NCBI GenBank assembly: GCA_015680685.1
Contig: MNCI01001967.1
Span: 281,066 to 345,065, forward strand
DNA length: 64,000 bases
Reading direction: 5' to 3'
Origin: Gnetum montanum
Taxonomy: Eukaryota > Plantae > Gnetophyta
The notes beneath the pieces are model-generated. The model was given only the letters and a program-made list of their open reading frames with translations. It did not search any database and had not been told where the DNA came from. A program made the position numbers and the translations under genes. Shown here one piece after another: positions 6,871-62,646 of this stretch (the first letter of the stretch is position 1; each line of letters opens with the position of its first letter).

Positions 6871-8179
6871 TGTGATTCACCATGTATATGCAAGCATCCT
6901 CCAAGATTAATAACTTGAAACAAAGCTAAGATAATGATGATATATGTATTTCACCATCTATATGCCAGCATCCTTTAAAATTAATTTTAAAAATTGACAA
7001 AGATGGTTGACATATAATAGTAAAGGGCTTAGACAGCCCTACGTTGCCCAATATTAATAAAGATGAATTTAATAGAGGAGGTGTTGTAGTTGCCCTACGT
7101 TGGCTAACATGCTTTGCACCTAGATGTATGAACACCCTGAACGCTAGCTTGCGATTGAATCTACCCTGAATGCTAGGTTGGAACCATGTTCCAAGCATGC
7201 ATACATGTAATTTTTTTAAAAATTTGAATTTAATAACCTTATAGATCTGGTTAGATTTCGGTTCTGTAGTAAACTGTGCCATTGTTACCCCCGTCAATCT
7301 CCAATGCAGCAATGCCCAACGTCTTGAGCCCAAAAAAACCGTTCTCGTTGGTTCCCTCTGCAAACATGATACTGTCGGTAGCTGTTGTATCTAATCTCTA
7401 CTTGGGGTGACGTATTTGAGAAACATGGCACCGAGAAGTGAGTTGAGTTTTTGATTAATTGAATCGCAAGGGGATTTCGGTTGTATTAGCCTAAAGTTTC
7501 GTTTAACTGTTTTTTGGGTTTACCTGCAATTGCAGCCGTTACAACCCATCCTAATTCAATCTAGGTTTTTATTTATTTATTTTTATGTGTTGATGCTTAT
7601 TTAGATTTAATCAAGAACTCACTAAATATTTGAATTGGTTGAGAGGGATGGTAAGATGCTTGTTTTTCAAGTTGGAAGGTGGGTTAGAACTGTGCATCAC
7701 TCTACCAAATCTCTCTGATCCACTTGGCCAGATTAATATTGATGGTACCATATCGTTTTAACAAAAGGGAAAATTTTTTCAGTTCTTTGATCTATTAAAA
7801 TCATCTGGCAGATCCTGAAAATGCACACAAAAGTAAGTTTGAAATATAAAATAATGAATATCAGAGATTTATTCTTTCATAAAAAAATAGTGGACATTAC
7901 AGTTAGGTAGAAATCTAATCAACAGCGGGAAGAAAACTCGTCTAAAAATCTCAGACAATGAAATTTATTTAAACATGAACACAGTTGAGAGACCATCCCA
8001 CAGATCTTGCTTCCATACACTGCTAAATATATAGTTCCCTCATTAGGACTGAATAACATGCCAATAGGTGACATCACTAGCCTCCTTATTTTTAAGGCAT
8101 ACAAAATATATAGTCTTTAAACTTGCATTTGTTACATGAGCCCTCAGATGCTGCATCTATGGTTTCAACTTCTTAGATT

Positions 8180-8385
8180 AAAAAGTTGCTTGGTTTTATG
8201 TGCGTTTGTGTAGATGTATCATGGGATTCTTGTTGGATCCACCCACATGGCCACTTATATTGATTTCTGAATTCTTTTGGGATTTGATTTCCATAGGTGT
8301 AATCTATAGTGATTCAAGAATTGTTTGATTCAACATCTTCAGCAATTCAATAGCTAGAGATTCGAGCAACCAAACATGCCCTTAG
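8180..8385. mobile_element. Possible PIF/Harbinger (Tourist-like) MITE; related copies at ~45137-45310 and ~56480-56673
   Basis: Right end AACCAAACATGCCC followed by TTA or CTAA, the typical Tourist terminus. Left terminus only degenerate (..TTGGTT..). Confidence 0.35.
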
Positions 8386-12151: not shown

Positions 12152-12340
12152 ACTGAAACTAAAACTGAAAATTTATTTATATCCACTAAGACCCTCTTGG
12201 ATATATTGGACATCTTTAGTTTCAGAATTCCTTTTATAAAATTTTTTTCATACTTAATGTAGCATATTGGAATTGAATATGTGACTTGGGGTTTCTATGC
12301 TAAGACTTTTATTACTAAGCTAACACTTAATTCTTGAGCA
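12152..12340 (-). mobile_element. RTEX-like LINE 3' tip
   Basis: Minus strand AATAAATTTTCAGTTTTAGTTTCAGT, the same tail type as at 27576-27600 and 34455-34476. 5' extent uncertain. Confidence 0.4.
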
Positions 12341-13274
12341 CCATTTAGATGAAAGCAAGTATATACAATTTAGATAAAAGTACTAAAAGGATACACACCA
12401 AGCAATATTATCCTTTGAGCTGAGTCCCTTATCGATCTTTTTTGAGTCCTTTCACTTGTGTGAAATCACAAGCTATATTGAGAATACAGTTCTAATTATT
12501 AGTTAGAGAGTCCTAGTATTATACTTTCTCCATAATTCACATGAAATCCTTGGTAACAATGCTAGCCAAACTTATCACCAGTATGCTGATCGTACAACCT
12601 GGCCAAGCCACATTGGTTTTAGCCAAAGTCAGGTCTTGTTGAGAAAATAATTTGTATCACTTTACCGTTTCTGGCTTGCATTCTCTTTTCTGTAAGATGT
12701 TTCAAATTGCACTTGAATCATTATTAGTTTAATTGATTTTTCAAGGCGTAGAGAGAGAAAAAAATTAGCATTTGAGTTAACAAATGTTTTGAAAATAATT
12801 TGAATTGCTCTGAAATCTGCCCACTGTTACCAACAATATCAATATCAGAATCCACATAGTCTTACATGAACATAATGCTTTTTAAAAGTTGACTGAAACT
12901 TCTGAAAATGGAAAGAAAAACTTCTGAAATCTAAAATTTGAATCTTTAGTAAATTTTATACATGTGGCCTTGAGGCATATGCTAGGCAATTAGTAAAGAT
13001 ACTTACTAGGCCACATTAGTATCCGTTAATTCTTTAGATATTAAACAACATCAATGCTAATGAGAATCCTAGCATGCTAGTGAAAACAAATTGTCAAAGT
13101 TCATGATAATTTTATAGGTACATTAAACTATTTTATTGGGTACGTGGCTACAGACTAAAACTGATTTATCAAAATGATGCTACTTTATCTCCTATACATG
13201 CTTAAAATAGTTGTTTTCTTGCAAGTTATTTTCATTGAAGATTAGGATTAAAAATCAATAATTTATTAAAGAAA

Positions 13275-13885: not shown

Positions 13886-14496
13886 ATTTTTTTATGTTAT
13901 TTGAAAGGATAGATGAAAAGAGTCCTTGTAGCAATTGCCAAATGTTTTTTTAGTTTGCAAGTAATCGAATATTTCATTCAGGTATATAGGGAACACACAA
14001 AGGAAGTAGTCACAAGCAGTTATTTCTTTTAAAGCTATAAAGAACTTTGTAGATCGTTCTGAAGCTGTGTAGAGAGAATATAGCATTTGTATTTAGGCAG
14101 TTTTGGGATGCTTTAGAACAGATACTGAAGCTTCTCTGCATCACAGACAGTACTGCTAATTAATAGTTAGTACTTATGAAATAAAGAAAACGCTGGAAAA
14201 CAAGCAGTAACGCAATTGAAATAGTTGAAAGCTACAATCTGCCATAATAAATATTTTTTTCTTTCATGTTCCATAAATCTGTAACATGCATTCATGAATT
14301 TTTATTGCATCCATGCTTCGGTTTCCATGAAGTCCTAATATGATTTAACTTGCCAAAATGATACTGTTAATTATGGTTCAATAATTTGTCAAGGATTTCA
14401 GGTTATTAGGAAAGTCAACTTGTAACATTAACTGTTTAAAGATGTACAACCGTTTGTGATGTACATGATAATTAATTATAGTTAGTAAAGATAATT

Positions 14497-14656
14497 GGAG
14501 GGGTGTTGGAACCCGCAATAATTACAATATAGGTACAACCCAAGATATATAGTCCACATAGAACTTTATAACTCAGGATTGCCCACCAGAATTGAACCCA
14601 TGACATAGAGTTTCTAAATCAAGAGTCTTACCACTAGGTTAACACCTTATTTAATA
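14497..14656 (-). mobile_element. tRNA-derived SINE (160 bp), no poly(A), 3' end GCGGGTTCCAACACCCCTCC
   Basis: 13-bp TSD AGTAAAGATAATT (14484-14496 / 14657-14669). Pol III A box TAACCTAGTGG (14641-14631) and B box GGGTTCAATTC (14599-14589). Homologous copy at 41427-41559. Confidence 0.85.
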
Positions 14657-14733
14657 AGTAAAGATAATTAATATGGTATCAGATAGATAAATGGCCATGG
14701 TAAGCATCATTAAAGAGTTCACTTACTATAGTG

Positions 14734-15232
14734 AGTTGGCCTATGTTGATGGAATAAAGGTACTAAGAAGATGAGTAAAGATAATGAATAGAAATGATTT
14801 GTGATGAAAGGGTGCAACCTTGTGCAAGATAATATAAAAGAGGAACATTTTCAATTTCATGAATATTGTGATATACCTCTTACCATAGTTCTATGTATAC
14901 CCTATTATAGTGTTTGATTTGCTGCCTACCCTTTCATTTGTTGTATCATTGCTTTATTTGCAATTTTTCATGAATATTGTTATATACCATAGCAAGTTGG
15001 CCCATGTTGATGGGATAAAGGCACTTAGATGATGAGTAAAGATAATGAATAGAAATAATTTGTGACAAAATGGTGCAACCTTGTGCAAGACGATATAAAA
15101 GAGGAACATTTTCAATTTCATGAATATTGTTGTATACCCATTACCATAGTTCTATGTATACCCTGTTATAGTGTTTAATTTGCTGCCTACCGTTTCATTT
15201 GTTGCATCATTGATTTATTTGCAATTTTTCAT
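14734..15232 (+). repeat. Tandem duplication, ~261-bp period
   Basis: Units start AGTTGGCC at 14734 and 14995. The junction contains a short filler copied from inside the unit. Confidence 0.9.
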
Positions 15233-40486: not shown

Positions 40487-41426
40487 TGTAAAGTGATGTT
40501 TATGTGGGGATGTGTTTTATCCCACATGTGTTAGAGTTGGGATTTGGTCCTAATGTTTCCTTATAAATAGAAGGCTTGGGGTAGCCATTAAGTAGGTGTT
40601 TTTGATGCAAAAGCATTGTATTGAGGTTTTACCTTAGAGACGAAAGTTTGAGATCTAAGATCTATTGGAGTAACAGATTGGGTGCTTGGGAAAGCAATAA
40701 GGATAGCTTGTGTCCTTAAGATTTGAGCAGAATAGAAGGTAAATTAGCATTGTTGTGGAGGTAGGGTAAAAAGGGCCCGAACCACGTAAATCTTTGTGTT
40801 CTTGTGTTATTTTCTTTTGCTATTTTCATTCTGCTTTTACAACAAACGTTTTCTAGAGTTTACAACGGTTTTTTTCAATGATTTACAGTGTCTATTTGAT
40901 TTGCTACAATGTGATATTTTTTTCCTTTAATGTTTTATTCAAATCTACAATGTTCTAATCATTTCTCTAGAGTTTCTTTAGTGTATTTTTAGATTTGATC
41001 TGCTGATTATTTTGTTGAAACTATCGCTTTCGATTATAACAAATTTCTCTCTTCTTGTAACATTCAACATCCATCTACTAATTCATATTTATGTGATATT
41101 AATTTATTGTTTATGCCTCTCCTGTGCAACCCAACATCCAACACCATATAAAATACTAGGTCTAATCAATGTCACTATAGACTTTAGGATACCTCTTAAA
41201 ATCAAGAAATTAATAGAAGCATTACAAAAGCAACAATTATGGAGTCATAACAAGATCATGTTGATTGCAAGACATTGAAGACATGGTTTTGCAAGAAACT
41301 AGTTATGTACATGATATACCATATAAGGTTGATCAAAATGTGTAGTATTCATCTAATTAATGTTAACAAGGCATTGCTAATTTAGAGTATGCAAGTTGAA
41401 GTTCATAAGTCACAAGTTTAATTCCA

Positions 41427-41559
41427 GGTAGTAATACTATTGATTTGGATGTTCCAAGTTATGGGTTTGATTTTGGTGGGCATTGCTAAGTTATAAAGTT
41501 CTAATTTATCTATATGTCTAGGGGGTAAATACTCTTAAAAACATTTTGGGTTCCAACAC
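41427..41559 (+). mobile_element. Second copy of the tRNA-derived SINE (5'-truncated in the A box)
   Basis: 16-bp TSD CACAAGTTTAATTCCA (41411-41426 / 41557-41572). Body aligns to 14497-14656 (ATGGGTT..TGGTGGGCA..AGTTATAAAGTTCTA..GGGTTCCAACAC). Confidence 0.8.
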
Positions 41560-42966
41560 AAGTTTAATTCCAAACATTATGATAAAACACATGCTAATGT
41601 GGGGTCATAGTAAAAAATATGTTTGGGCTATGCAATCAGGTAGTTAGTCAGCCATAGAAAATTATGATCAAATCTTTTGCCTACCTTAACATTCAACCCA
41701 TGTTAATGGGATAAAGGCACCATGATAATGATGAAATAAGTAATTATTCATAAATTTTTTCATCCATGTCTTTGTGAAGGAAATATATCATCTTGTACTT
41801 TGATTGAAGAATTCCTATTTGACCTCAATGATTTGGTAAAGATTTTAATAGTAAACTTATAATGGTAGTAGCTAAAAGTTGCTTTAATTATTCCTAGACT
41901 TTTGATTGTATACTCTATATACTTTTGTTTTGAAAAGAATACTTGATAGACATTAAAGGCTGAGATTTGCCTATACTTAGATAACTCTTTCATTATGCTT
42001 AATATACTATTTCTACTTTGACTATTAATAACATTGATATAGTTTGCTATGTTGCATGCTTAAGATGATACTTTTAGCATATTGGTCCATTTGATTAGTC
42101 GATAACGGTGGGTCAAATTTAACTTTTCCTTGAAAAAGTATATTTTTATGATCTACATTGTAGACTCCATTGACAATGTTATAAGATTTATTTTAACTAT
42201 AAATTAGTTATATCCATAGATCATAATTACTTTGGTGGATAATTTTTGAAAAAGTCAAAACTTTTGTAAAGTTAGAATTTAAGATTATAGGTCTTCCTAG
42301 GAAAATTATTAAAGATGAAATTATTTTCTCATTTAGTAATCTTCAACAATATTTTATTAAAATGGATAAGTGGAATAAAATATGTATAATAAATATCTAC
42401 CATAACTTGCCTAATTCTTATAACTATTGTCATTTTGAAGGTCACTTGTTTAATTATACTACTGTGAAATTAGATAAAGAATTTATATGCTTTTGTACAA
42501 GGTTTTGATACAACTTTTATTATTTCCAAAACAAACAAGGGTAACTTTTTTTCCTAAGGCAATATATAAAGGTTGAAGCTAAAATAATTGCAAGACAATA
42601 TGGGATAGGAGAAAGACTTGTATTTGCAGAACTCATGAAAGTGCAAAGTGTGACTTAAATTTGTAACGTGAGTAAACTTTTCCTACAACAAGATAATCAA
42701 GCTACCTTAGTGTTGATTGTACCATTATGCGTAATGATGATTGTTATCAATGATTTAAAGGAATGGAAAGCAAGGAACCAACAAATACAAGGGAATTGTC
42801 AACATAATATAGAATAAGCATTCAAAGTTGCATGTTGCAAGTGGAAGGATGGATGAAGAAAGATGATGGCGAAAGCATGTTACAAAAGGGGTCAATGAAC
42901 AGCACGGTGAGAATCAACATTATTATTCTCCATTAAAACCATGGCAGAAAATGCCACGTCTTGTTT

Positions 42967-43968
42967 TTAGGAGGAAGGCATGCCACGCTGGCCAGCATGA
43001 CTAACCAGGGGAAAGTGTTGCTTGTACCATGCTGCTGACTCAGTGGCCTTGGTCACAGTGTTGCCACAGTCAACCAAAAGGTTGTGCCCGCTGACGTAAG
43101 CAGCCTCGTCAGACGCCAGATACAGCACCGCCTGCGCAATGTCCAGCGTGGTCAAATAATGTCCCGGCAAGGGAGACCTCTCTGCCACGAAGGCACAAGC
43201 GTTGTCCATCGTGGCATCCATGTCAGTCAACATGGCGTTAGCGTGGGCCAGCAGCAGCGTGGGAACTCCATCCGGAGACACCATGTTCACCCGCACGCCG
43301 TGGGCCCGGAGTTCCACGCTAGTGCTCCGCATGAGGCCCACGAGGCCGTGCTTCGCCACGCAGTACGAGTGTGGGCTCATGCCGCCCACCACAGCAGCAA
43401 CCGACCCAGTCAGCACTATGGAGCCCCTGCCACGCGGCTTCATGTGGCGCGCCGCGTGCTTCACGCCGAGGAGGGCCCCACGCAGGTTCACGGCCAACGT
43501 GTAGTCGAACTCGTCCACGGGCGTCTCGTCGATGGGGCCCGTCGCGCCGATGATGCCGACGTTGTGGTGCACAATGTCCAGCTGGCCCCCGCCCGCAGCC
43601 GCTGCAGCGTCCACTGCTGCCGCCACCTCGGACTCCTTGCGCACGTTGCAGGCCACGTAGGATGCCAGGTCGCCGATATCTGCCGCCGTGGCAGATGCAT
43701 CCTCCACGTCAGCAATGACGACCCGCGCGCCGTGCACTGCCATGAGGCGGGCTGTCGTCTGGCCGATCCCCGTGGCGCCACCAATGACCAGCGCAGTTTT
43801 GCCCTCCAGCCTGTCACCCAATTCTTGCCACGTCAGCGAAGAGTATAAAAACAAAAAAGCATTTCAGTGCGAAGTTTCGTAGAAAGGAGACTCCTCAAGC
43901 GACCTCTTTGCCTCTGGAGAAGGAATGGCGCACATGTTGCGGAGGAGCCTACGCCTTTGCTGTTTCAT
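42967..43968 (-). CDS. Short-chain dehydrogenase/reductase, SDR110C (ABA2/TS2/secoisolariciresinol-DH-like) family; exons 43968-43904 and 43810-42967 (302 aa, or 291 aa from ATG 43935)
   Basis: 93-bp GT..AG phase-2 intron in KR|LEGK, the usual position in this family. GxxxGIG motif, catalytic N-S-YxxxK (YCVAK), GVRVN.VSP, YVSGHNL.VD. Open frame, GC-rich codons. Confidence 0.9.
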
Positions 43969-47587: not shown

Positions 47588-48421
47588 AAGTTCTTTCTAA
47601 CTTTGTTGTGCATAAGTTGCATAATAATATTCCTTGGTATGAAGATTGGTTTTGGCCTGACGGTTCCCCTCTTTGCTCTTTACGTATCTCTAAAGCCAAA
47701 TCTTGGTTTCATGCGCAAGCTTTTCAATTTTCCACTATAAATAGACGTTGGAGTTTACATTTTGAGGATCACCAGTGGAAAATTATTTTTCGTCGGATTT
47801 GGACTTCCAAGGCCCAACCTAAGCATCATTTCTTGTTTTGGTCCTTGGTTCATCAAGGTCTTCCCATCGGACATAGGCTTCATTTGTTAGGAATTGATCA
47901 TCCTAAATGCCCCATTTGTAAAGCGGATGATTCTTTTCAACACGTCTTTTGGGATTGTTCATTCTCTCAATACATTTAGAAATGGTGTCAATCTCTCCGA
48001 GTCTTCCTTCCTAATCATTTTATTCGTTTTCCTCAATGTATCCTTCAAGATGATTGTGTTAAGCGTCATCTTCAAAAAGCCTGGAAAATCCTCCTATTTG
48101 AGATTATCTTCTTTATTTGAAAATGTCGTCTAGATGCTTGGTATAAACACAAACTACAATGAATTTGACTACGGTATGAAATGCTCTATTGCTAGTAATG
48201 TTCAACTTCACTGTCGTGGCTTTCTCAATAATATTACCTTTTCCAACTGAATTCTCTTTGAATTAGGTGTATTGATCTCCTTCTTCAGTTGTCATTCCGG
48301 GGGTGCGATAAGCTTTTGTCTTGTTGCAGGTTGACTGGGGGTCATCTTGCAACATTGGGCTCTGTTAAGGTTTTGGATTTAATTTTTCTTCTGCAGCTAG
48401 CACATCACCTTAACAACCCCC
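47588..48421 (+). mobile_element. 5'-truncated L1 (zf-RVT + 3' UTR) ending in a C-run, no poly(A)
   Basis: 11-bp TSD CCACATGTAGC (47577-47587 / 48422-48432). PKHHFLFWSLVHQGLPIG..CPIC...DSFQHVFWDC, homologous to ORF2 near 54550-54700. Ends ACCTTAACAACCCCC. Confidence 0.85.
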
Positions 48422-50357
48422 CCACATGTAGCTGGCAGATTCAATTTCATCCATTTCTTTGCAGATTGTTTCTTGTCAGGCTTTATTGGCTTCAAAAGGG
48501 TATGTCGCAGCACTGTTGCAGCGTTCCTGTTGCAGGTGCCTGCAAACATACCACAGACGTTTTATGGGATCTGACACCATTAATATTTTTTATAAATTTA
48601 CGGAATGCAAATACGTTATCTGGTATTTGACGGTTTCACAAAAGGCTGTAATAGAGAAAAAAAGAACCCTAATTCTTTACGGGAATCCATAATCCACCTT
48701 GTCTTATTTGTGTACTTGTAATAAACCCATATGATGCATTCACGTGAACAGGGAAGAGCGTGGAGGGTATTAAATTTGCAGTTTAAGCGCGGATTACATC
48801 AACCTGATATTGAAATGACTATGACAGTATATAATACTAGCTACTTCCTGGTCCACAGGTACCCTTCGAGATGAAAGCGTTTCGAGCCGTTAAAGGCATC
48901 ATTGGCCAGGAGCTTTGTGGTAGCTATTCAATATTCAATGATAGATATCGATACTAGAGACATTGGACAGCGGACACAAAAAAAAGGTACCTACTTCTGT
49001 AATTTAAAAACTTGAAGGGAATTCATAGGGACCTGTATTATCACATCCTTGGTGCAGGATTTCCCAGAAACGAAGGACTTCCTATCAAGTTCGAAGATTT
49101 GTGTTCGGCTTTGGCTCATTAACTCTTATCTTTTTGGAACTTTGTTTAACTGGATGAACATTAAGGCTCACGGGTAATGATCCTTTTACTTTTGTCAAAT
49201 TTTACTTTGATTTTTTTACTTTGATTTTTTGTAGAAAGGTTGAATGATCCTTGAACTTATCAATTTTTACTTTGGCATTTCATGGAAGGGTTGAATTTAA
49301 CTGGTTTGAGTTACTCAAAAAAATTAGGCTTTCACTCATTTTCTGAGGATCCTACATACTCCTCTAACCCATGTCCCTTTCAATGAGTATTGAGGCTCCA
49401 AGTAATATTCCTTTAAAGACTTTTGTCAACAATACATGGGTTAGGAGTAGTTACATGAAGTGTAAGGTGTGGCTAGAAGATTAGGACCGGTTACTCATCG
49501 CATAGGCTAGTTTAGATTTGTTCTGCTATTACTTAGAATTAGAAACTTTTACTCTCACTTCATGATTATTAGGATCATAATGGCCAATTCAGCTATCTCA
49601 CCATGAGTTAAACCATACACATTGATTTTACTAACTCATGTGGGAAGACAACGATCGTGAATGCTAACTAATTACTGATATAATCACATTGCCTTATCTG
49701 CAAAGTTTGATTGGGATTTTGCATGAACACTTGTATCTCATATGCTTGGGTGTTGGATATTCCATCGCTCATTAGTACAAAAGAGGTATGAACAATGAAT
49801 CAATGTAGGAGAAATGCAAATGCTTAAATGGATGTTGAATGTTATCAAATGAGATAAATTATACAATATAGACATTAGAGAGACTTGGAGTGGCTTCTAT
49901 TTCAAATAAGCTACACAAATAGTGTCTTAAATGGTTTAGACATATGCAATGAAGATAGATAACAAGCCTATAAAACAAGGTTGCTACCTAACTATTCCAA
50001 GAAAGCCACTCAAAGAAAGACCAAAAAGATATGAGCAAAATTTGTTAGGATAAGACTAATTTGATGATGATTTAAGTGATTCACCATGTATATGCAAACA
50101 TCTTCCAAGATTAATAAGTTGAAACAAAGCTAAGATAATGATGATATATGTATTTCACAATCTATATGCCAGCATCCTTTAAAATTAATTTTAAAAATCG
50201 ACAAAGATGGTTGACATATAATAGTAAGAGGCATAGTCAGCCTTACGTTGCCCAATATTAATAAAGATGAATTTAATCGGGTAGGCAAAGATGCTTGACA
50301 TAACATATAATAGTAAAGGGCATAGTCAGCCTTACGTTGCACAATATTAATAAAGAA

Positions 50358-51221
50358 ATGGCTCGTCATTTTATTTTGGTAGAATTATCTGACGCTTCAC
50401 AGGTCGAAACGGCTCTCTCAAAAAAAAATTTTCCAACTAGAAATGCAACCCTTATCGCACGCCCCTGGAGTTTTGACTTTAATGTCAATGACCCCGCTTT
50501 TAATATAATTCCTTGTTACATAGAATTGCCCAACCTTCCACACATTTTCTCCCCGGTTGAGAGGGACATAGTTAGCACCCTGGGCCCTATTATTTCCGAT
50601 CATTGTAAGGCGATCAATGGAACTCAAATTCGACGTTACTGTATTGAACTGGATATAGCCCGTCGGAAGACCTCATTAAACCTCGGTGCTGGTGGAAAAA
50701 TCTTTACCCAAAAAGTGGACTATTTTTACCTTCCAAACTCATGTAGCTATTGTCATAGGGCCGAGCATCATATCTCGGTGTGTCCCATCCTAACCAGGAA
50801 AAAACAATCAGTAGCCTCTCAAAAGACTGGTTCCCTAGTCACACCACTAGTCGGCCCATCCTCCGTACCCTTCAAATTCGGATCTCCTCTCCCAACATCT
50901 CCTAAATCCTCCTCTCAACCTAGCCGCTCCAAGCTCCAGAAACAACAGTCAGGTACTTACACCTCCACCCAGGTCATCCCTTCAAACGTTGTCAAGAACT
51001 CATTCTCGGAGGATGAGTTCGTGGTGGCCAGTGGTAGAAAACGAGTCAAAGCTTCCCTTCGTTCTACTTCTACCTCCACCTCCTCTTCACTAGACACTTC
51101 CATGGCCCTTGTCCCCACCAACAACTCCTTTGCCCTCTTGTCAGGAACAAAGGAAACTGATACTTCGACTCCCAAACCTTTGGTTACCCTCCCATCCAAC
51201 CCACCCCTGGTTTCCTCATGA
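50358..51221 (+). CDS. L1 ORF1 C-terminal part (DUF4283-like end, CCHC knuckle, Ser-rich tail)
   Basis: ..ARPWS..IPCYIELPNLP..LG..RYCIELD..QKVDYFYLPNSCSYCHRAEHHISVCP. The N-terminal codons in the ORF track (50337-50356) come from flank/TSD. Confidence 0.85.
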   Translation: MARHFILVELSDASQVETALSKKNFPTRNATLIARPWSFDFNVNDPAFNIIPCYIELPNLPHIFSPVERDIVSTLGPIISDHCKAINGTQIRRYCIELDIARRKTSLNLGAGGKIFTQKVDYFYLPNSCSYCHRAEHHISVCPILTRKKQSVASQKTGSLVTPLVGPSSVPFKFGSPLPTSPKSSSQPSRSKLQKQQSGTYTSTQVIPSNVVKNSFSEDEFVVASGRKRVKASLRSTSTSTSSSLDTSMALVPTNNSFALLSGTKETDTSTPKPLVTLPSNPPLVSS

Positions 51222-54200
51222 ATCTCTTTTCTTGGAATGTTCGAGGCCTTACTGATAGGCTTCGACGAAAGCGAGCAGGCAACTTTATATCTAGTCTTAA
51301 TTCGACTTTTGATTTCATTCTTCTTCAAGAAATTAAGATTTCCGCCAACCTTTTATCCTATTCCGCCCATTGGTTTCTTCCTCACTCCTCAATCCTAGCG
51401 ACATCCCATGCTTGTGGGAAAGGAGGAGCGGCCATTCTCCTCTCACCCTATTGGAAAACTAAAATCCTTCAAAGCGGTTCGGATTCTGGGCATAGAGTTT
51501 CCTGGGCCACTTTCTCCTCCCAGCATGGCCCCTTTGGCATTTGCTCGATATATGCCCCAAACGACTCCACAGAACGGGCTCTCCTTTGGCATGAACTTGC
51601 CACTTCTCTCCCCCCAATGCCTTGGATATTCGGAGGAGATTTTAATATGGTAGAATTCCCTCAAGATAAGCTCGGAGGGGCATTTCTTCAATTGCCCAAT
51701 CTCGAGTATCAGGCCTGGTCTGCGTTTACGAAACGATTTTACCTCTCAGACGGAGCAGACAACTCCATGAGCGCTTCCCCCCATCGATTCACCTGGAGCA
51801 ATCTCCGTCTAGGGCAAGCTCGCATCTATAGTAGGTTAGATAGGTTCCATTTCTCCACCCTCTCCTTTTGGCAAGCTTGCTCTGCCACTACAGTCCATCA
51901 TCATGCCACCTTATCCGACCACCTTCCTATCTCCATATCTATCCAGCTACATGGTAGCCCTAACCGACAACAATTCCATCTTTTCAGACTGCACAACAAA
52001 TGTTTTTCTTCCCCCACTGCCCAACTTCTTCTCTCCAACCTTTGGAATGCCGAACCTAGGCCCCTAAATCAGACGGGTTGGATTAATTGGTGGCATCGTG
52101 CTTCATGTCGAGTGCGAAATTTCACTCGTTCATACGGTAAGACCGTGGCTGCTCAAGCCAAACTTGAATACAACAAAATTCACCTCACCATTGAGCATCT
52201 CACTATCAAACTAGCTCATGATCCCTTCAATACTCTAATTCACGAGGAGCTAGCTAGAGCACGCGTAGCCTTCCAACATTGGGATGTGTACCATGCAGAA
52301 AGTGCCTTAACTAAAAGTCGGCTCACTTGGTTAAATATTCAAGATGAACACTGTAAGGAATTTTTTAAATATCTTAATGCTGCTTCCCCCTCGCATGCTA
52401 TCGACAAAATCTCATGTGAGGGTACTACCATTACTGACCACAATAGTATCCTCTCTTATCTCAAGAACCACTACGAAACCCTTTTTGCTGCTACCCCAAT
52501 GGACATCTCTTCGTTCAAGGCTGCCACCCCTGATTATCCTCGTCTTATTAATCCTACTATGCTACAAAGCCTTGAAGCTGATATTACTTTAGCGGAGCTA
52601 CAGGAGGCTTGTTCCAAGTTACGTCGCGGTAAGGCTCCTGGTTATGATGGGTTTCCAGCAGAATTTTTTCAAAATCATTGGGATTTGGTGGGCAAGGACC
52701 TTATGCAGGTCATTAACGAGGCTATCTTCACTGGTTCCCTCGGGCCCAATCTAAATCAAGGGGTAATTCGTCTCCTCCCCAAGTCTGGGGATCTAACCGA
52801 TATCTCCAATTGGCGTCCCATAACTCTTCTCAATGTAGTGTATAAAATTTGGGCGAAGTGCCTTGCCTTACGGCTGAAAAAAATTCTCGGTCAGATCATA
52901 TCTCCTCAGCAAACAGGGTTTGTTCCGGGCAGGTATATTTTAGACAATGTGGTAGCGGCGTGGGAAGGTCTCAAGTGGGCTGAGGACGATGGACAAGATA
53001 TTCTCCTAGTGAAACTAGATTATGCCAAGGCTTATGACAACATTAAGTGGGATTTTATCTTGCAGACTATGACCAAATTGGGTTTTGGACCCAAGTTCTT
53101 GCATATGGTGACATGCTTATTCTCAGATGCTACTGCGAGAATTGCCACTACCTTCGGCATTACCTCTCCCTTTCCAATCCATAGGTCTGTGCGCCAAGGT
53201 TGTCCTCTCGCCCCCTATCTCTTCATCATTGCATCAGACTTTCTTTGTCATCAAATAAACCTGGACATTAAAACTAAAGTTCTCACTGGGGTTAGCCTTT
53301 CCTCCTCTCAACAACAGCTTCTCAATATGCACTTTGCCGATGACTCCTTTTTTCTAGTTCAAAACACAGCCACCAATTTGCACCGCCTCTTATCAAGGGT
53401 GGAGCAATATTGCACACTCTCAGGTTCCATAATTAATTGGAATAAATCCTCTGTTTATAGCTTTAAGGGCAATTACAACCATGTGACCCACTATAAGTGG
53501 AAGCAACTTCAAGATCAAGACATCGTTAAGATTCTGGGAATCCCTTTCCGCTTCAGAGGCTCAACATCTATCCTTTGGGAGCAAGTTATTCATCGAATTC
53601 AAAAGAAACTCGATAAATGGAAAACTAAGCCCCTCACACTTGCGGGTAAATACCTTATCTGTAAGTCCATATGCGCATCCACCCATGTGTATTACTCTTC
53701 GTGTTGGGCCCCTTCCCAAGCTGCCTACCAGAAGTTAGAACGGTTATTCCGTGACTTTATGTGGTCCTCCAAGGACTCTCAAAAAGGCTTTCATCGTGTC
53801 GCTTGGACTATTGTTACTCTCCCCAAGAATAAGGGCGGCTTAGGCCTTTTAAACTCCTATAAGCAAGGAATTACCTTGGTTGCTAAGTGGTTGGTACAAC
53901 ATTTAGATGCCTCAAATATTATAGGGACCCTCCTCCAATTAAGGCTTCATCAAGCCTTTCCTAAAAATAAGCCCTTCTGGCAAGACATCCATTTCGTTAA
54001 TTGGATTATTTCCCCCCTCACTATCATTCTTCCCGGATCTCATGTCTTCAAAAGCATTTGGAGGGCCTGGCAAATTGTTCACACTCACATAGACTGGACT
54101 ACCGTTAAAATCAATCCTACTATCCTCTCTAAAGTGTGTCCGTGGTGGTTACCTCTGTCACCCGCTCCCCTAGCTATCACAAATGCTAAGGTGGCTACCT

Positions 54201-55060
54201 CGTGGTATCGGAAAGGTGTCATTTCCTTGAATTGTCTTAGGCTAGCTAGTCGTTGGATTTCAGGGGTCGAGTTTAACACTTTGTACGGGGAGTCGGCTGC
54301 AATGAAACATTGCCTTGTTCAGATTTACTCCTTCCTCCACAGTCACTGGCACCTGGATGTTACCGTGCCAAGCCTTTTCCATGGCCTGCAATGGCGTAAT
54401 GGGGTTAGACTCCTTCCCTATCGGCCATCTGTCCCCTTTCATCTCATGCATGACCCATCTGCAGTCGTTCAACGTTGCAATAGATATTGGCACAAACAAG
54501 CGTCAGAATCATTTTGGATCCCTCTCTTCCAACATATTTGGAAACTTCCGACCCTCCCCAAAATTAAGCAGTTCCTTTGGTGTCTTCTCCACCATGGTCT
54601 TCCTATCGGAAAACGTCTAGAATATCTTGGGATTCCTAATCCCACTTGCCCTCTATGTGGTGGACTAGATGACTTTGTCCATGTGTTTTGGCAATGTCCC
54701 TTTGCTCAACATGTGTGGCAGTGGACTTCTAAAGCTTTTCCATCCTACCAGTTATCTCAAGAGGCTGCCATATTCGGATTCTTGAACATTACTTCTACTA
54801 ACCTTAACTTTCTGTGGAAAGTTCTTAGACCTATTATTTTACATTATATTTGGAAGCGAAGATGCAATGTTCTATTTCAAAAGACCGAGTATTCTAACAA
54901 ATGTTTGCTTACCAGGTTGGAGATGTTGCAGATCTTTCGGCTCACCTATTTTCAACTCACATCTCAAGCATCCAAGTTCAATTTGGACAGTCATCAATTG
55001 GTTCATCTCCTGCAGCTCTGGGACAATCCTATGTGTCTTAATTACACTTCGCATCAGTAA
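51218..55060 (+). CDS. L1 ORF2 (APE endonuclease - reverse transcriptase - zf-RVT), 1280 aa, uninterrupted
   Basis: SWNVRGL, LQE, IYAPN, GGDFN, RLDRF, SDHLP; KAPGYDG, WRPITLLN, KLDYAKAYD, RQGCPLAPYLF, FADD; CPLC..DDFVHVFWQC, IWKRRC. Confidence 0.97.
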   Translation: MNLFSWNVRGLTDRLRRKRAGNFISSLNSTFDFILLQEIKISANLLSYSAHWFLPHSSILATSHACGKGGAAILLSPYWKTKILQSGSDSGHRVSWATFSSQHGPFGICSIYAPNDSTERALLWHELATSLPPMPWIFGGDFNMVEFPQDKLGGAFLQLPNLEYQAWSAFTKRFYLSDGADNSMSASPHRFTWSNLRLGQARIYSRLDRFHFSTLSFWQACSATTVHHHATLSDHLPISISIQLHGSPNRQQFHLFRLHNKCFSSPTAQLLLSNLWNAEPRPLNQTGWINWWHRASCRVRNFTRSYGKTVAAQAKLEYNKIHLTIEHLTIKLAHDPFNTLIHEELARARVAFQHWDVYHAESALTKSRLTWLNIQDEHCKEFFKYLNAASPSHAIDKISCEGTTITDHNSILSYLKNHYETLFAATPMDISSFKAATPDYPRLINPTMLQSLEADITLAELQEACSKLRRGKAPGYDGFPAEFFQNHWDLVGKDLMQVINEAIFTGSLGPNLNQGVIRLLPKSGDLTDISNWRPITLLNVVYKIWAKCLALRLKKILGQIISPQQTGFVPGRYILDNVVAAWEGLKWAEDDGQDILLVKLDYAKAYDNIKWDFILQTMTKLGFGPKFLHMVTCLFSDATARIATTFGITSPFPIHRSVRQGCPLAPYLFIIASDFLCHQINLDIKTKVLTGVSLSSSQQQLLNMHFADDSFFLVQNTATNLHRLLSRVEQYCTLSGSIINWNKSSVYSFKGNYNHVTHYKWKQLQDQDIVKILGIPFRFRGSTSILWEQVIHRIQKKLDKWKTKPLTLAGKYLICKSICASTHVYYSSCWAPSQAAYQKLERLFRDFMWSSKDSQKGFHRVAWTIVTLPKNKGGLGLLNSYKQGITLVAKWLVQHLDASNIIGTLLQLRLHQAFPKNKPFWQDIHFVNWIISPLTIILPGSHVFKSIWRAWQIVHTHIDWTTVKINPTILSKVCPWWLPLSPAPLAITNAKVATSWYRKGVISLNCLRLASRWISGVEFNTLYGESAAMKHCLVQIYSFLHSHWHLDVTVPSLFHGLQWRNGVRLLPYRPSVPFHLMHDPSAVVQRCNRYWHKQASESFWIPLFQHIWKLPTLPKIKQFLWCLLHHGLPIGKRLEYLGIPNPTCPLCGGLDDFVHVFWQCPFAQHVWQWTSKAFPSYQLSQEAAIFGFLNITSTNLNFLWKVLRPIILHYIWKRRCNVLFQKTEYSNKCLLTRLEMLQIFRLTYFQLTSQASKFNLDSHQLVHLLQLWDNPMCLNYTSHQ

Positions 55061-58007
55061 TCTCTGCAAGGAAGTTTTCCCTTCATTTTGTGGATTCACC
55101 ATTGGCATTCCCTAGCTCTTGGCTTCATCTACTTCTATGTCATTCTATTTTGTAAAATGCTAGTTTGTGCGAACATTTGGTTGTGTCCCAACTTGAGGTA
55201 CCTCCTCTTATACTAGTTGTTTTTTTAAGGTGTCCCAACTTGAGGTACCTTAACCCTACGACTTCTTCAAGTTGTTGTAATTGATGCCCCTTTAATTTCA
55301 ATAAAATTTCTTTTCGGGGTCCGACACCCCCCAATATTAATAAAGATGAATTTATTTGGGGAGGAGTTGTAGCTCTCGTTAGCTCACATGCTTTGCACCT
55401 ACATGTATGAACACCCTAAACGCTAGCTTGCGATTGAATCTACCCTAGCTTGTGATTGAATCTACCCTGAATGCTAGCTAGGTTGAAACCATGTAATTTT
55501 TTTAAAAATTTGAATTTAATAACCTTGTAGATCTAGTGGAAGTTCGGCTCTGTAGTAAACTGGGCCATTGTTACCCCGTTAATCTCCAATGTAGCAATGC
55601 CCAACGTCTTGAGCCCAAAAAAACCGTTTTCGTTGGTTCCCTCTGCAAACATGATACTGTCGGTAGCTGTTGTATCTAATCTCTGCTTGGGGTGACGTAT
55701 TTGAGAAACATGGCACCGAGAAGTGAGTTGAGTTCTTGATTAATTGAATCGCAAGGGCATTTCGGTTGTATTAGCCTAAAGTTTCGTTTAATTGTTTAAC
55801 TGTTTTTTGGGTTTAGCTGCGACTGCAGCCTTTACAACCCATCCTAATTTAATTTAGGTTTTTATTTATTTATTTTTATGTGTTGATTCTTATTTAGATT
55901 TAATTAATCAAGAACTCACTAATTGAATTGGACTATGGTTTAGAGGAGCAAAATGCTTGTTTTTCAAGTTGGAAGATGTAGGTTAAAACTCTGCATCACT
56001 CTACCAAATCTCCCTGATCCACTTGGCCAGGTTAACATTGAGGTTACCATATCGTTTTAACAAAAGGGAAAAATATTTCAATTCTTTGATTTATTAAAAT
56101 CATCTGGCAGATCCTGAAAATACACACAAAAGTAAGTTTGAAATATAAAATAATGAATATCAGAGATTTATTCTTTCATAAAAAATAGTGGACATTACAG
56201 TTAGGTAGAAATCTAATCAACAGCGGGAAGAAAACTCGTCTAAAAATCTCAGACAATGAAATTTATTTAAACATGAACACAGTTGAGGACCATCCCACAG
56301 ATCTTGCTTCCATACACTGCTAAATATATAGTTCCCTCATTAGGACTGAATAACATGCCAATAGCAGTGACATCACTAGCCTCCTTATTTTTAAGGCATA
56401 CAAAATATATAGTCTTTAAACTTGCATTTGTTACGTGAGTCTTCAGATGCTGCATTTATGGTTTCAACTTCTTAGATTAAAAAGTTGCTTGGTTTTATGT
56501 GGGTTCATGCAGATGTATCATGGGATTCTTGTTGCACGGCCACTTATATTGGTTTCTGAATTCTTTTGGGATTTGATTTCCATATGTGTAATCTATAGTG
56601 ATTCAGGAATCGTTGGATTCAACATCTTCAGCAATTCAATAGCTAGTGATTCGAGCAACCAAACATGCCCTTAGATTTTGTCCTTGAAAAGGGTGCTTGG
56701 GGGTTAAGGATGTGAGGTTCAATTTGGGCATAAGGTTGTGAGAATTCTTAATGGGTGTTCAAGGAATTGGAAAGTTTACTTCCAATAAGATGTAACATGA
56801 TGGTATAGCTTTTCAGTGTATCCGGTACATTAGTTACACTGGAAAACTTTATTGTCAAAAATGATATGTTCCTTAAAACAATAGTTTGTAAGAAAGACTG
56901 CTCCTCTTTTTCTCTTCTAGAGTTTTATAGAAATTATCAATTGCTATGTTGACTTGTCATTTGTTGCTGCATTGTAGAGGATATGGATCAAAGATTGCTC
57001 CTTTTGTTTTCAAGGTGGGTAAGCATTGTTGCTTATTAGATGTAACATGCTAAACTCAAACTATTTGGTAGAATGTCCAAATTTGATTTTGAAAGGTTAT
57101 GTAAGGAGCATGACTATTTTCTTGATATGACAAGTAATAGAGAAATTTGGAAAACATATAGAAAACATATATATGATCATCATTGACTTGGAAAAATCAT
57201 ATGATAGAGTACCAAGAAGTATTATTTGGTAGCCCTTACACAAGTATGAAGGAGTTACTACAAAAATTACAACAACTTGTGAAATAACCTTTGACTTTCC
57301 AATCATAGTATCTACATCAAGGGTCTATGATTAGCTTATACGTATTTGCTATTGTTATGGTTGAATTGGCAAAGAAAAAACATAATGAAATCTATTGGTT
57401 TATGCTATTTGTAGATGACATTATGTTGGTGGATACAATTTAGATACTTGGAGTGTTTGGTTCAAGTGGATGGTGAGATTAACAATGATGTTACAAGCAA
57501 AATTAAAGTAGGATGGAAGAAATGATGAGAAGCTAGTGATGTGCTTTGTGATAGAAGAATCCTTGCTAGGTTGAAGGTTTAGTCTTAACAAATTGCTATT
57601 AGATCTGGAATTCTTTATGGTGTAGAATGTTGCCCTATTAAAAAACATCAGACATAGCATGTGCATATGATAAAGATGCATATGTTGAGGTGGATGTTGA
57701 TGTGATAGGAAAGATTGAATTAACAACTCTTTTATTAGGGATAATTTGGGAGTAGCTTCCATAAATGAGAAGATTAAAGAAAGCCCTCTTAGATGGATTG
57801 GTCATGTGTTAAGAAGACTAGAGAATGCTCCTATTAAAACATGTTGCTTCATTAAAGATGAAGGCAACTAACAAAGAGGTAGATTAAAACATACTTGGTT
57901 TGCTTGCATAAAGAAAGCTATCCAAGATTTGGGTATTAATGTTTATTTGGTTCTTAATAGAAGCGAAGGATGTAAAAGAACTCATATAACCAACCCCATG
58001 TAGTTGG

Positions 58008-62180: not shown

Positions 62181-62646
62181 CTGCAATCACACGGGCCAAT
62201 ATTAGTAAGGTTGTTTAGGAAATCAGGTTATACCTTACTACGCCTTAATTAAAGATCATTTATTATTGTGTGATCGTGCCTGAAAATTATAATGATGGGT
62301 CCTATGACTTAGGTGGATGTGCGTTTTAATATCCCGGTATACTTAAGGGCGTATGATTTTTGGCACAATTTTCGAGGTGTTAGTATTAATTACCCTAATT
62401 GATGTCCTTTGGGCGATGAAAAATTTTAAAAAATTTAGGCACTTTTCGGCAAGTGTCTCTCCCCCACGACTAAACTGAACACTCCGGGTTCAAGTAGGTT
62501 CAAACGGAATTCAAATCGGAGTACCAGCGCGTGAGATATAGTTGAAAAAGCAAGGGTCACTCAAGCGCAAGTCGTAGAGAAAGAATTCAAAAACTTCCCC
62601 CCCGCGTGAATGCCAAATGAAGCTAAGTGTTGTGGTGGGGGGTTCC

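What the first reader, a model, noticed from the sequence alone, without database searches (positions are those of the whole stretch)
14484..14669. tRNA-SINE that shares its 3' tail with the intact L1: candidate stringent L1/SINE pair without poly(A)
The 160-bp SINE (A and B boxes, 13-bp TSD) ends CGGGTTCCAACACCCCTCC. Its second copy (41427-41559, 16-bp TSD) ends GGGTTCCAACAC. The intact L1 ends CGGGGTCCGACACCCCC (55315-55331). None has poly(A). The shared (C)GGGKTCCRACAC(CCC) folds as a small GGG(G)T/ACCC(C) stem-loop. Established knowledge: shared 3' tails define stringent LINE/SINE pairs (common for RTE, CR1, L2), whereas most L1s rely on poly(A) and only a few plant/algal L1-SINE tail-sharing cases are known. 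Both the probable enzyme donor and its passenger are in this window.
Basis: partly seen in the sequence, partly recalled or inferred. Interest (0 to 1): 0.85.

Follow-up and report, generated by a model that had tools for sequence, protein, structure and literature searches.

The report
Plant SINE sharing an L1 tail
A very abundant small plant jumping element (a SINE) ends in nearly the same 16 letters, with no poly(A), as an intact L1-type jumping gene 36 kb away, so it probably borrows that gene's copying enzyme through this shared tail. This arrangement is known but rare for L1 elements.

Summary
Target-site duplications (TSDs) fix the ends of all three elements. SINE1 (14497-14656, minus strand) has a 13-bp TSD. 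SINE2 (41427-41559) has a 16-bp TSD. The full-length L1 (50276-55329/55332) has an exact 25-bp TSD and intact ORF1 and ORF2. All three end in GGGKTCCRACAC plus a short C run. None has poly(A).

In the whole window, the best match to the L1's last 16 letters lies exactly at SINE1's end (13/16; 14/16 to the family consensus).

Contigs from four organisms show 7,000-8,000 SINE-bearing contigs per run. Their tail consensus is TTAGGGTTCCAACACCCCC, followed by unrelated AT-rich flank.

This is most likely a stringent-type L1/SINE partner system, probably in a gymnosperm. I rate it a new member of the rare kind described for maize, sorghum and Chlamydomonas (Ohshima 2012).

Four points are not shown:
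- that other L1 copies carry the tail;
- that the small hairpin matters (it folds no better than shuffled sequence);
- that this L1 family, which differs at 2 of 16 positions, is the actual mobiliser;
- that the pair is absent from Repbase or Dfam.

First readers of this scan noted the same theme on other pieces of this genome (s1-833642, s1-825506, s1-819328); I did not check those notes.

The parts
14497..14656 (-). SINE1: a 160-nt tRNA-type SINE with A- and B-box-like motifs. It ends ...GGGTTCCAACACCCCTCC.
   Evidence: In one search, 7,240-8,355 contigs per run lie on exactly this interval and do not pile up on the flanks.
14484..14496 (.). TSD copy next to SINE1's 3' end (AATTATCTTTACT on the minus strand).
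   Evidence: identical 13-mer at 14657-14669.
14657..14669 (.). TSD copy next to SINE1's 5' end.
14497..14515 (-). SINE1 3' tail module CGGGTTCCAACACCCCTCC.
   Evidence: The family consensus TTAGGGTTCCAACACCCCC comes from 231-330 loose contig ends per run.
41427..41559 (+). SINE2: a diverged copy truncated at its 5' end. It ends GGGTTCCAACAC and has no C run.
41411..41426 (.). 5' copy of the SINE2 16-bp direct repeat CACAAGTTTAATTCCA. Its first 3 letters overlap the tail motif.
41557..41572 (.). 3' copy of the SINE2 direct repeat.
50276..55332 (+). Full-length L1-clade LINE. The 3' end is ambiguous between 55329 and 55332 because the TSD begins with CCC.
50251..50275 (.). L1 5' TSD copy (25 bp, exact).
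55330..55354 (.). L1 3' TSD copy (25 bp, exact).
50358..51221 (+). L1 ORF1 (287 aa from the first ATG; DUF4283). Its stop codon overlaps the ORF2 ATG (ATGA).
51218..55060 (+). L1 ORF2 (1280 aa): AP endonuclease, reverse transcriptase (FADD at 706-709) and zf-RVT.
   Evidence: Pfam. (catalytic columns invariant). (colinear with human L1 ORF2p residues 10-892, E 4.6e-50).
55315..55332 (+). L1 3' tail module CGGGGTCCGACACCCCCC. The predicted hairpin is GGGGU/ACCCC with loop CCGAC.
55300..55305 (+). AATAAA, 24-27 nt before the L1 end.
   Evidence: read directly.
47588..48421 (+). 5'-truncated fragment of a second L1 family. It ends ...TTAACAACCCCCCC, has the TSD (CC)ACATGTAGC and has no terminal hairpin.
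   Evidence: (31% identity to ORF2 residues 1059-1221). (-1.5 kcal/mol).

Best explanation
This is a non-autonomous tRNA-type SINE family, with thousands to tens of thousands of copies, spread by the enzymes of an L1-clade LINE lineage. That lineage does not use poly(A).

Both elements end in a short module: GGGKTCCRACAC followed by 4-7 C. The proposed mechanism has three steps, all inferred:
1. The L1 ORF2 protein recognises this terminal module on its own RNA and, in trans, on SINE RNA.
2. The endonuclease nicks an AT-rich target.
3. The freed DNA 3' end pairs with 2-3 terminal letters of the RNA (CCC, CC or CAC), and reverse transcription starts there. No poly(A) is copied, and the C run varies in length.

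Shown here: the shared terminal sequence, TSD-defined ends, absence of poly(A), 5' truncation of SINE2, family-wide conservation of the SINE tail, and L1 coding integrity.

Inferred: recognition by ORF2p, any role of the hairpin, priming by microhomology, and that this particular L1 family, rather than a sister subfamily with an exact tail, is the donor.
For: - TSDs bracket all three elements directly at the motif.
- The motif has 3 exact hits in the window and all are terminal.
- SINE1's terminus is the best match in the window to the L1's terminal 16-mer: 13/16, next best 11/16, with P(>=14/16) of 1.1e-8 per offset.
- In four organisms, 7,240-8,355 contigs per run carry the SINE. The loose-end consensus is TTAGGGTTCCAACACCCCC followed by AT-rich letters that vary between runs, with no homopolymer.
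- SINE2 lacks about 22 nt at its 5' end, as LINE-made copies often do.
- ORF2 has an APE domain, an RT with FADD, and zf-RVT. It aligns colinearly with human L1 ORF2p.
- In 3 of 4 insertions, the letters just before the 5' TSD copy repeat the element's last 2-3 letters: L1 CCC, SINE2 CAC, second L1 CC.
- First-reader notes on other pieces of this genome report the same theme. They are unchecked and are not independent evidence.
Against: - The shared stretch is only about 16 nt, with 2 differences between this L1 and the SINE consensus. Known pairs share about 45-80 nt (PMC3472496).
- The hairpin is no more stable than shuffled sequence. SINE2 lacks its 3' arm, and no covariation is available.
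- A second L1 family ends in ACA plus a C run without the 5' arm, so the specific part of the signal may be smaller than the motif.
- Only one copy of this L1 was seen.
- The SINE1 insertion is old: it is shared by organisms A-D, with about 7% divergence in D. The L1 copy looks young. Co-activity is therefore not shown.
- ARAGORN and Rfam found no tRNA match.
Confidence: 0.65

Rival explanations
1. Generic oligo(C) priming rather than stringent recognition. Several L1 families in this genome simply start reverse transcription on any RNA that ends in ACA plus a C run, much as mammalian L1 uses poly(A). The GGGKT arm shared by this L1 and the SINE would be leftover common ancestry, not a recognition element.
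For: - The second L1 family ends TTAACAACCCCCCC with no terminal hairpin.
- The hairpin energies are not better than shuffles.
- SINE2 was inserted without the C arm.
- C or CAC microhomology at the target occurs in 3 of 4 insertions.
Against: - The SINE family consensus keeps the full GGGTTCCAACACCCCC across four organisms and hundreds of sampled ends. That is more than a C run.
- The SINE tail matches the L1 tail at 14/16 positions, including the non-C part.
Confidence: 0.2
2. A historical tail capture with no present dependence on this L1. The SINE acquired an L1-type end long ago and is now dead, or is moved by a different LINE. The intact L1 in the window would be only a distant cousin of the former partner.
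For: - The SINE1 insertion predates the split of organisms A-D.
- The tails differ at 2 of 16 positions.
- Most laid contigs are under 90% like SINE1: 5,039 of 8,355 in X1.
Against: - In X1, 82 contigs are at least 99% and 573 are 95-99% like SINE1. This argues for fairly recent or long-lasting amplification.
- An L1 with intact ORFs and a perfect 25-bp TSD carries the tail.
Confidence: 0.12
3. Chance resemblance of two unrelated GC-rich ends.
For: The motif is short, and both elements have otherwise AT-rich 3' regions with no further similarity.
Against: - The probability of >=14/16 at one offset is 1.1e-8.
- The best non-self match in 128,000 scanned positions falls exactly on a SINE terminus.
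- The pattern has 3 exact hits in the window, all terminal. Allowing 1 mismatch, chance predicts only 0.33 hits.
Confidence: 0.02

Closest known systems
Maize ZmSINE2/ZmSINE3 and sorghum SINEs with LINE1-1_ZM (monocot 1a L1 lineage; Baucom 2009, Ohshima 2012, PMC3472496)
   Same: A plant L1-clade LINE and tRNA-type SINEs share a 3'-terminal sequence with a stem-loop. This implies stringent template recognition by an L1.
   Different: - The shared region there is about 45-50 nt, and compensatory changes prove the stem. Here it is about 16 nt, and the 4-5 bp hairpin has no statistical support.
- Here the end is a short C run with no 3' repeat or poly(A).
- The host here looks like a gymnosperm, not a grass.
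- The ORF2 here is only about 24-34% identical to any database protein.
Chlamydomonas SINEX-3_CR with L1-1_CR (Ohshima 2012)
   Same: An L1-clade LINE and a SINE share a tail.
   Different: That pair shares about 80 nt and both elements end in poly(A). Here neither has poly(A).
Eel UnaL2 / UnaSINE1 (L2 clade; Kajikawa and Okada 2002, cited in PMC3472496)
   Same: The working model is the same: a LINE protein recognises a short conserved 3' stem-loop, and a short terminal repeat helps priming. Here the C run would play the part of (TGTAA)n.
   Different: It belongs to a different LINE clade. Trans-mobilisation was shown by experiment there. Nothing was tested experimentally here.
Mammalian L1 with Alu/B1 (relaxed type)
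   Same: The enzyme architecture is the same: ORF2 is colinear with human ORF2p. TSDs start in AT-rich sequence, and the target end pairs with the RNA's homopolymer end.
   Different: There is no poly(A). A specific 16-nt terminal module is shared instead.

Membership tests
L1-clade LINE | ORF2 has an N-terminal AP-type endonuclease followed by reverse transcriptase, colinear with L1 ORF2p | tested here: met
   Pfam Exo_endo_phos, RVT_1 and zf-RVT. phmmer to human L1 ORF2p 8sxt: residues 3-894 against 10-892, E 4.6e-50, compared with R2 at 1e-21 over the RT only. Catalytic columns are invariant.
L1-clade LINE | Separate ORF1 upstream of ORF2, and variable-length TSDs | tested here: met
   ORF1 is 287 aa with DUF4283, and its stop overlaps the ORF2 start. 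The TSD is 25 bp and exact.
L1-clade LINE | Placement inside the plant L1 clade on an RT tree with reference LINE clades | not tested
   No curated reference set (Repbase) was at hand. The best named hits are annotated LINE-1 or TX1-like plant proteins at 23-34% identity.
tRNA-derived SINE | Internal pol III promoter (A and B boxes) at tRNA-like spacing | tested here: met
   TAACCTAGTGG at 14631-14641 (1 mismatch) and GGTTCAATTCT at 14588-14598 (2 mismatches), with starts 43 nt apart. Matches this loose are common in the window, so position and spacing carry the weight.
tRNA-derived SINE | Detectable homology of the head to a tRNA | tested here: not met
   ARAGORN found no tRNA in the window. 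Rfam at E<=10 gave no tRNA match on 14450-14700. The head is too diverged to assign a parent tRNA.
tRNA-derived SINE | Short, non-coding, dispersed high-copy repeat with TSDs of variable length | tested here: met
   The element is 160 nt, with TSDs of 13 and 16 bp. 7,240-8,355 contigs per run in four organisms lie only on the element.
Stringent-type LINE/SINE pair (shared 3' tail) | The SINE's 3'-terminal sequence is homologous to the LINE's 3'-terminal sequence | tested here: met
   13/16 for SINE1 and 14/16 for the SINE family consensus against the L1 end. Both are terminal by TSD. The shared length of about 16 nt is short for the class.
Stringent-type LINE/SINE pair (shared 3' tail) | Tail conserved and terminal across SINE copies | tested here: met
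   The loose-end consensus is TTAGGGTTCCAACACCCCC followed by unrelated AT-rich letters, in 231-330 contigs per run across 4 runs.
Stringent-type LINE/SINE pair (shared 3' tail) | Tail conserved and terminal across copies of the LINE family | not tested
   There is only one copy in the window.
Stringent-type LINE/SINE pair (shared 3' tail) | Conserved 3' stem-loop supported by compensatory changes | tested here: inconclusive
   A hairpin is predicted, but z is -0.65 and -0.18. The L1 and SINE stems differ by a register shift, not by compensatory pairs. SINE2 lacks the 3' arm.
Stringent-type LINE/SINE pair (shared 3' tail) | Tail-dependent trans-mobilisation of the SINE by the LINE's proteins | not testable with these tools
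   This needs a retrotransposition assay.

The most novel reading that the evidence does not exclude
A seed-plant L1 lineage, probably in a gymnosperm, recognises a tiny tRNA T-arm-like hairpin followed by an oligo(C) end: GGGG / UCCGACA / CCCC. The L1 tail GGTCCGACACC matches the B-box/T-arm consensus GGTTCGANNCC with 1 mismatch. The lineage would prime on G-ending target DNA instead of using poly(A). That would be a living example of the ancestral stringent mode that Ohshima proposed for green-plant L1s. It would also explain why tRNA-derived RNAs became its parasites, reaching more than 10,000 SINE copies.
Probability: 0.2. Interest if true: 0.75.

Novelty: new member of a known kind. Interest (0 to 1): 0.55.

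Why it matters
L1 elements are the textbook case of relaxed, poly(A)-based template choice. [quoted passage not shown] He proposed that stringent recognition was ancestral in green plants.

A poly(A)-less L1 with intact ORFs and a highly abundant SINE carrying its 16-nt end, in what looks like a gymnosperm, would add a data point between the alga and the grasses. It also offers an unusually small recognition module that is easy to mutate in a retrotransposition assay.

In practice, SINE and LINE annotation pipelines that look for poly(A) or poly(T) ends would miss both families.

Tried and rejected
- Protein relatives: the ORF2 is not in the protein collection. The best relatives are only 31-34% identical.
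- Metagenome relatives: 80 loci at 23-35% identity were fetched. None carries the motif. Their ends are heterogeneous, some with poly(A), and cannot be delimited, so they say nothing about this lineage.
- Head-to-tail panhandle in the SINE: the MFE fold pairs GGUGUUAACC with GGUUCCAACACC. The duplex energy is no better than for dinucleotide shuffles; the fraction of shuffles at least as good is 0.83 for SINE1, 0.30 for SINE2 and 0.47 for the L1 UTR. Rejected.
- Terminal hairpin as a statistically supported structure: not supported.
- tRNA parent of the SINE head: ARAGORN and Rfam were negative.
- Literature search for the motif strings found only unrelated primer sequences. Searches for gymnosperm or Gnetum SINE/LINE partners found nothing relevant.
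- SDR gene (42967-43851, minus strand) as a retrogene with an informative tail: no TSD or tail is visible.
- Naming the organism: run and organism names are coded. The best named hits of the SDR gene are conifers at 55-57% identity. A gnetophyte is my guess only.

Full report
**What is there**

The window is AT-rich plant DNA (35.5% GC) with copia and LINE remains.

*SINE1.* Read on the minus strand, 14484-14669 is a 160-nt element (14656->14497) bracketed by a perfect 13-bp direct repeat, AATTATCTTTACT. It carries an A-box-like TAACCTAGTGG and a B-box-like GGTTCAATTCT with starts 43 nt apart. It ends ...TTGCGGGTTCCAACACCCCTCC directly against the repeat.

*SINE2.* A second copy at 41427-41559 is 73.7% identical to positions 23-154 of the first, so it lacks about 22 nt at its 5' end. 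It ends TTTTGGGTTCCAACAC. Its 16-bp repeat CACAAGTTTAATTCCA (41411-41426 and 41557-41572) overlaps the motif by its first three letters.

*The LINE.*
- ORF1 runs 50358-51221 (DUF4283).
- ORF2 runs 51218-55060 (1280 aa) and contains an AP endonuclease, an RT and zf-RVT.
- The catalytic columns, including FADD at 706-709, are invariant against five relatives.
- ORF2 is colinear with human L1 ORF2p over endonuclease plus RT (E 4.6e-50), whereas R2 matches at 1e-21 over the RT only.
- An exact 25-bp target-site duplication lies at 50251-50275 and 55330-55354.
- This fixes the element at 50276-55329. Up to three more C are ambiguous because the duplication begins with CCC.
- The element ends TTTTCGGGGTCCGACACCC(CCC).

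None of the three elements has an A run.

**Is it more than chance?**

GGGKTCCRACAC has three exact matches in the window, and all are at these three termini. Allowing one mismatch, chance would give 0.33 matches.

I slid the L1's last 16 letters over both strands of the window. The best non-self match is SINE1's terminus (13/16), and nothing else exceeds 11/16. With the window's base composition, the probability of >=14/16 at one offset is 1.1e-8. Chance is excluded.

Beyond these 16-19 letters the two 3' regions do not align.

**Family-wide test of the SINE**

Runs holding this locus were found in 8 studies. I laid Logan contigs of four runs, from four coded organisms A-D, on 14200-14950 at >=80% likeness.
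- 7,240-8,355 contigs per run lie on the SINE interval, and the flanks stay at single-locus depth. The family therefore has thousands to tens of thousands of copies in all four organisms.
- In X1, 82 contigs are >=99% like SINE1, 573 are 95-99%, 2,661 are 90-95% and 5,039 are below 90%.
- At 14517 the alignments of 231-330 contigs per run break off. Their overhang consensus, read on the SINE strand, is TTAGGGTTCCAACACCCCC (six C in organism D). It is followed by AT-rich letters that differ between runs and form no homopolymer.
- The motif is therefore terminal and conserved across the family, and there is no poly(A) or poly(T).
- The base before GGG varies (A, T or C).
- Locus-specific contigs run from the unique flank into SINE1 in all four organisms, with 0, 0, 4 and 14 differences. 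This insertion is therefore old: it predates about 7% sequence divergence.

**What could not be tested**

Only one copy of this L1 is available. The ORF2 itself is absent from the protein collection, where the best hits are 31-34% identical.

Eighty distant metagenomic relatives do not carry the motif and have ends that cannot be interpreted.

**The hairpin**

RNAfold predicts GGGGU/ACCCC with a 5-nt loop in the L1 (-7.6 kcal/mol) and GGGU/ACCC with a 6-nt loop in SINE1. Shuffled sequences fold as well (z -0.65 and -0.18).

The L1 and SINE stems differ by a register shift, not by compensatory pairs. SINE2 was inserted without the 3' arm. The hairpin is possible but not demonstrated.

A head-to-tail pairing that appears in the full SINE fold is also no better than shuffles, and I reject it.

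**A second L1 family and microhomology**

A 5'-truncated fragment of another L1 lies at 47588-48421. Its ORF2 C-terminus is 31% identical to this one. It ends TTAACAACCCCCCC, has the TSD (CC)ACATGTAGC and has no terminal hairpin. This agrees with note s1-834313 about the C run but not about a hairpin.

In three of the four insertions, the letters just before the 5' copy of the duplication repeat the element's last letters: CCC for the L1, CAC for SINE2 and CC for the second L1. I roughly estimate the chance of two or more such letters as under 0.05 per insertion. This suggests that the nicked target end pairs with the RNA's terminal letters.

If those letters are assigned to the element, three of the four duplications begin with AA (AAT, AAT, AAG; the second L1 fragment gives ACA), which is an L1-like AT-rich nick site. 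Variable C runs of 4-7 fit an initiation point that slides within the run. This is an inference from four cases.

**Most likely mechanism**

This is a stringent-type partnership. ORF2p of this L1 lineage selects RNAs that end in GGGKTCCRACAC plus C(n), namely its own RNA and, in trans, the SINE's. It primes on a target end that pairs with the last few letters, so no poly(A) is copied.

AATAAA sits 24-27 nt before the L1 end. The mRNA is therefore probably cleaved just after the C run.

My confidence differs by claim:
- that the tail is truly shared: about 0.95;
- that an L1 lineage with this tail mobilises the SINE: about 0.65;
- that the hairpin, rather than the ACA plus C-run end, is the recognised feature: about 0.4.

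The main rival is generic oligo(C) priming without specific recognition (0.2).

**Comparison with what is known**

[quoted passage not shown] Related sorghum SINEs were also found. 224 of 233 flowering-plant L1 families end in poly(A).

Those pairs share 45-80 nt, and the monocot stem is proven by compensatory changes. The pair here shares only about 16 nt, ends in oligo(C), and sits in a genome whose one host gene in the window (an SDR, 42967-43851) best matches conifer proteins at 55-57% identity. It is therefore probably a gymnosperm. A gnetophyte is my guess, not a result.

I file this as a new member of a known, rare kind. I found no description of it in the open literature searched, but the catalogues were not checked.

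**Earlier notes of this scan**

First readers flagged the same theme on other pieces of this genome: s1-833642, s1-825506 and s1-819328. None of these shows a follow-up. I did not test them and do not count them as evidence.

**Limits**

Noticed in passing
window 50201-50271 vs 50286-50356: The L1's whole 5' UTR is 87% identical (62/71, one 5-nt gap) to the DNA immediately upstream of its own insertion point, ending inside the 5' TSD copy. No ORF1 homology follows the 3' TSD. The young L1 sits right behind an older stretch that resembles an L1 5' UTR. I have no explanation. Possibilities include a preferred target inside L1 5' UTRs, a monomer-like UTR repeat, or a remnant.
   Followed up: partly
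window 55316-55332 (also 14497-14514 minus strand, 41548-41559): The shared tail looks like a tRNA T-arm or pol III B box. The L1's GGTCCGACACC matches GGTTCGANNCC with 1 mismatch, and the SINE tails match with 2. It has a G/C stem, the 7-nt loop UCCGACA, and then a C run. I noticed this after the fact, and such matches are common in the window (53 at <=2 mismatches), so it is only a lead.
   Followed up: partly
window 47588-48421: A 5'-truncated fragment of a second, diverged L1 family ends in seven C, with the TSD (CC)ACATGTAGC. No hairpin is predicted in its last 43 nt.
   Followed up: partly
window 12240-12345 (minus strand): A SINE-head-like fragment, about 70% identical to SINE1 positions 6-68, is followed by an A-rich stretch (GAAAAAAATTTT) instead of the C-rich tail. 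It may be another SINE type or a decayed copy.
   Followed up: no
window 55183-55203 and 55230-55250: An exact 21-nt direct repeat, GTGTCCCAACTTGAGGTACCT, lies in the L1 3' UTR and contains a GGTACC palindrome. The last 163 nt of the UTR fold better than shuffles (z -2.48).
   Followed up: partly
window 42967-43851 (minus strand): An intronless 294-aa short-chain dehydrogenase gene sits in a GC-rich island. Its best named hits are Wollemia and Taxus (57%) and Cryptomeria (55%). No poly(A) or TSD is visible downstream.
   Followed up: partly
window 60930-62183 (minus strand), next to the assembly gap at 59855-60039: A 417-aa ORF has a Transposase_32 domain. Other notes of this scan link that domain to an extra ORF2 tail in LINEs of this genome.
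   Followed up: no
window 14200-14950 in runs X1, X2, X7, X10: About 50 nt at 14720-14771 also attract extra contigs (depth 36-168, against about 10-20 for the flanks), so another low-copy repeat lies there.
   Followed up: no
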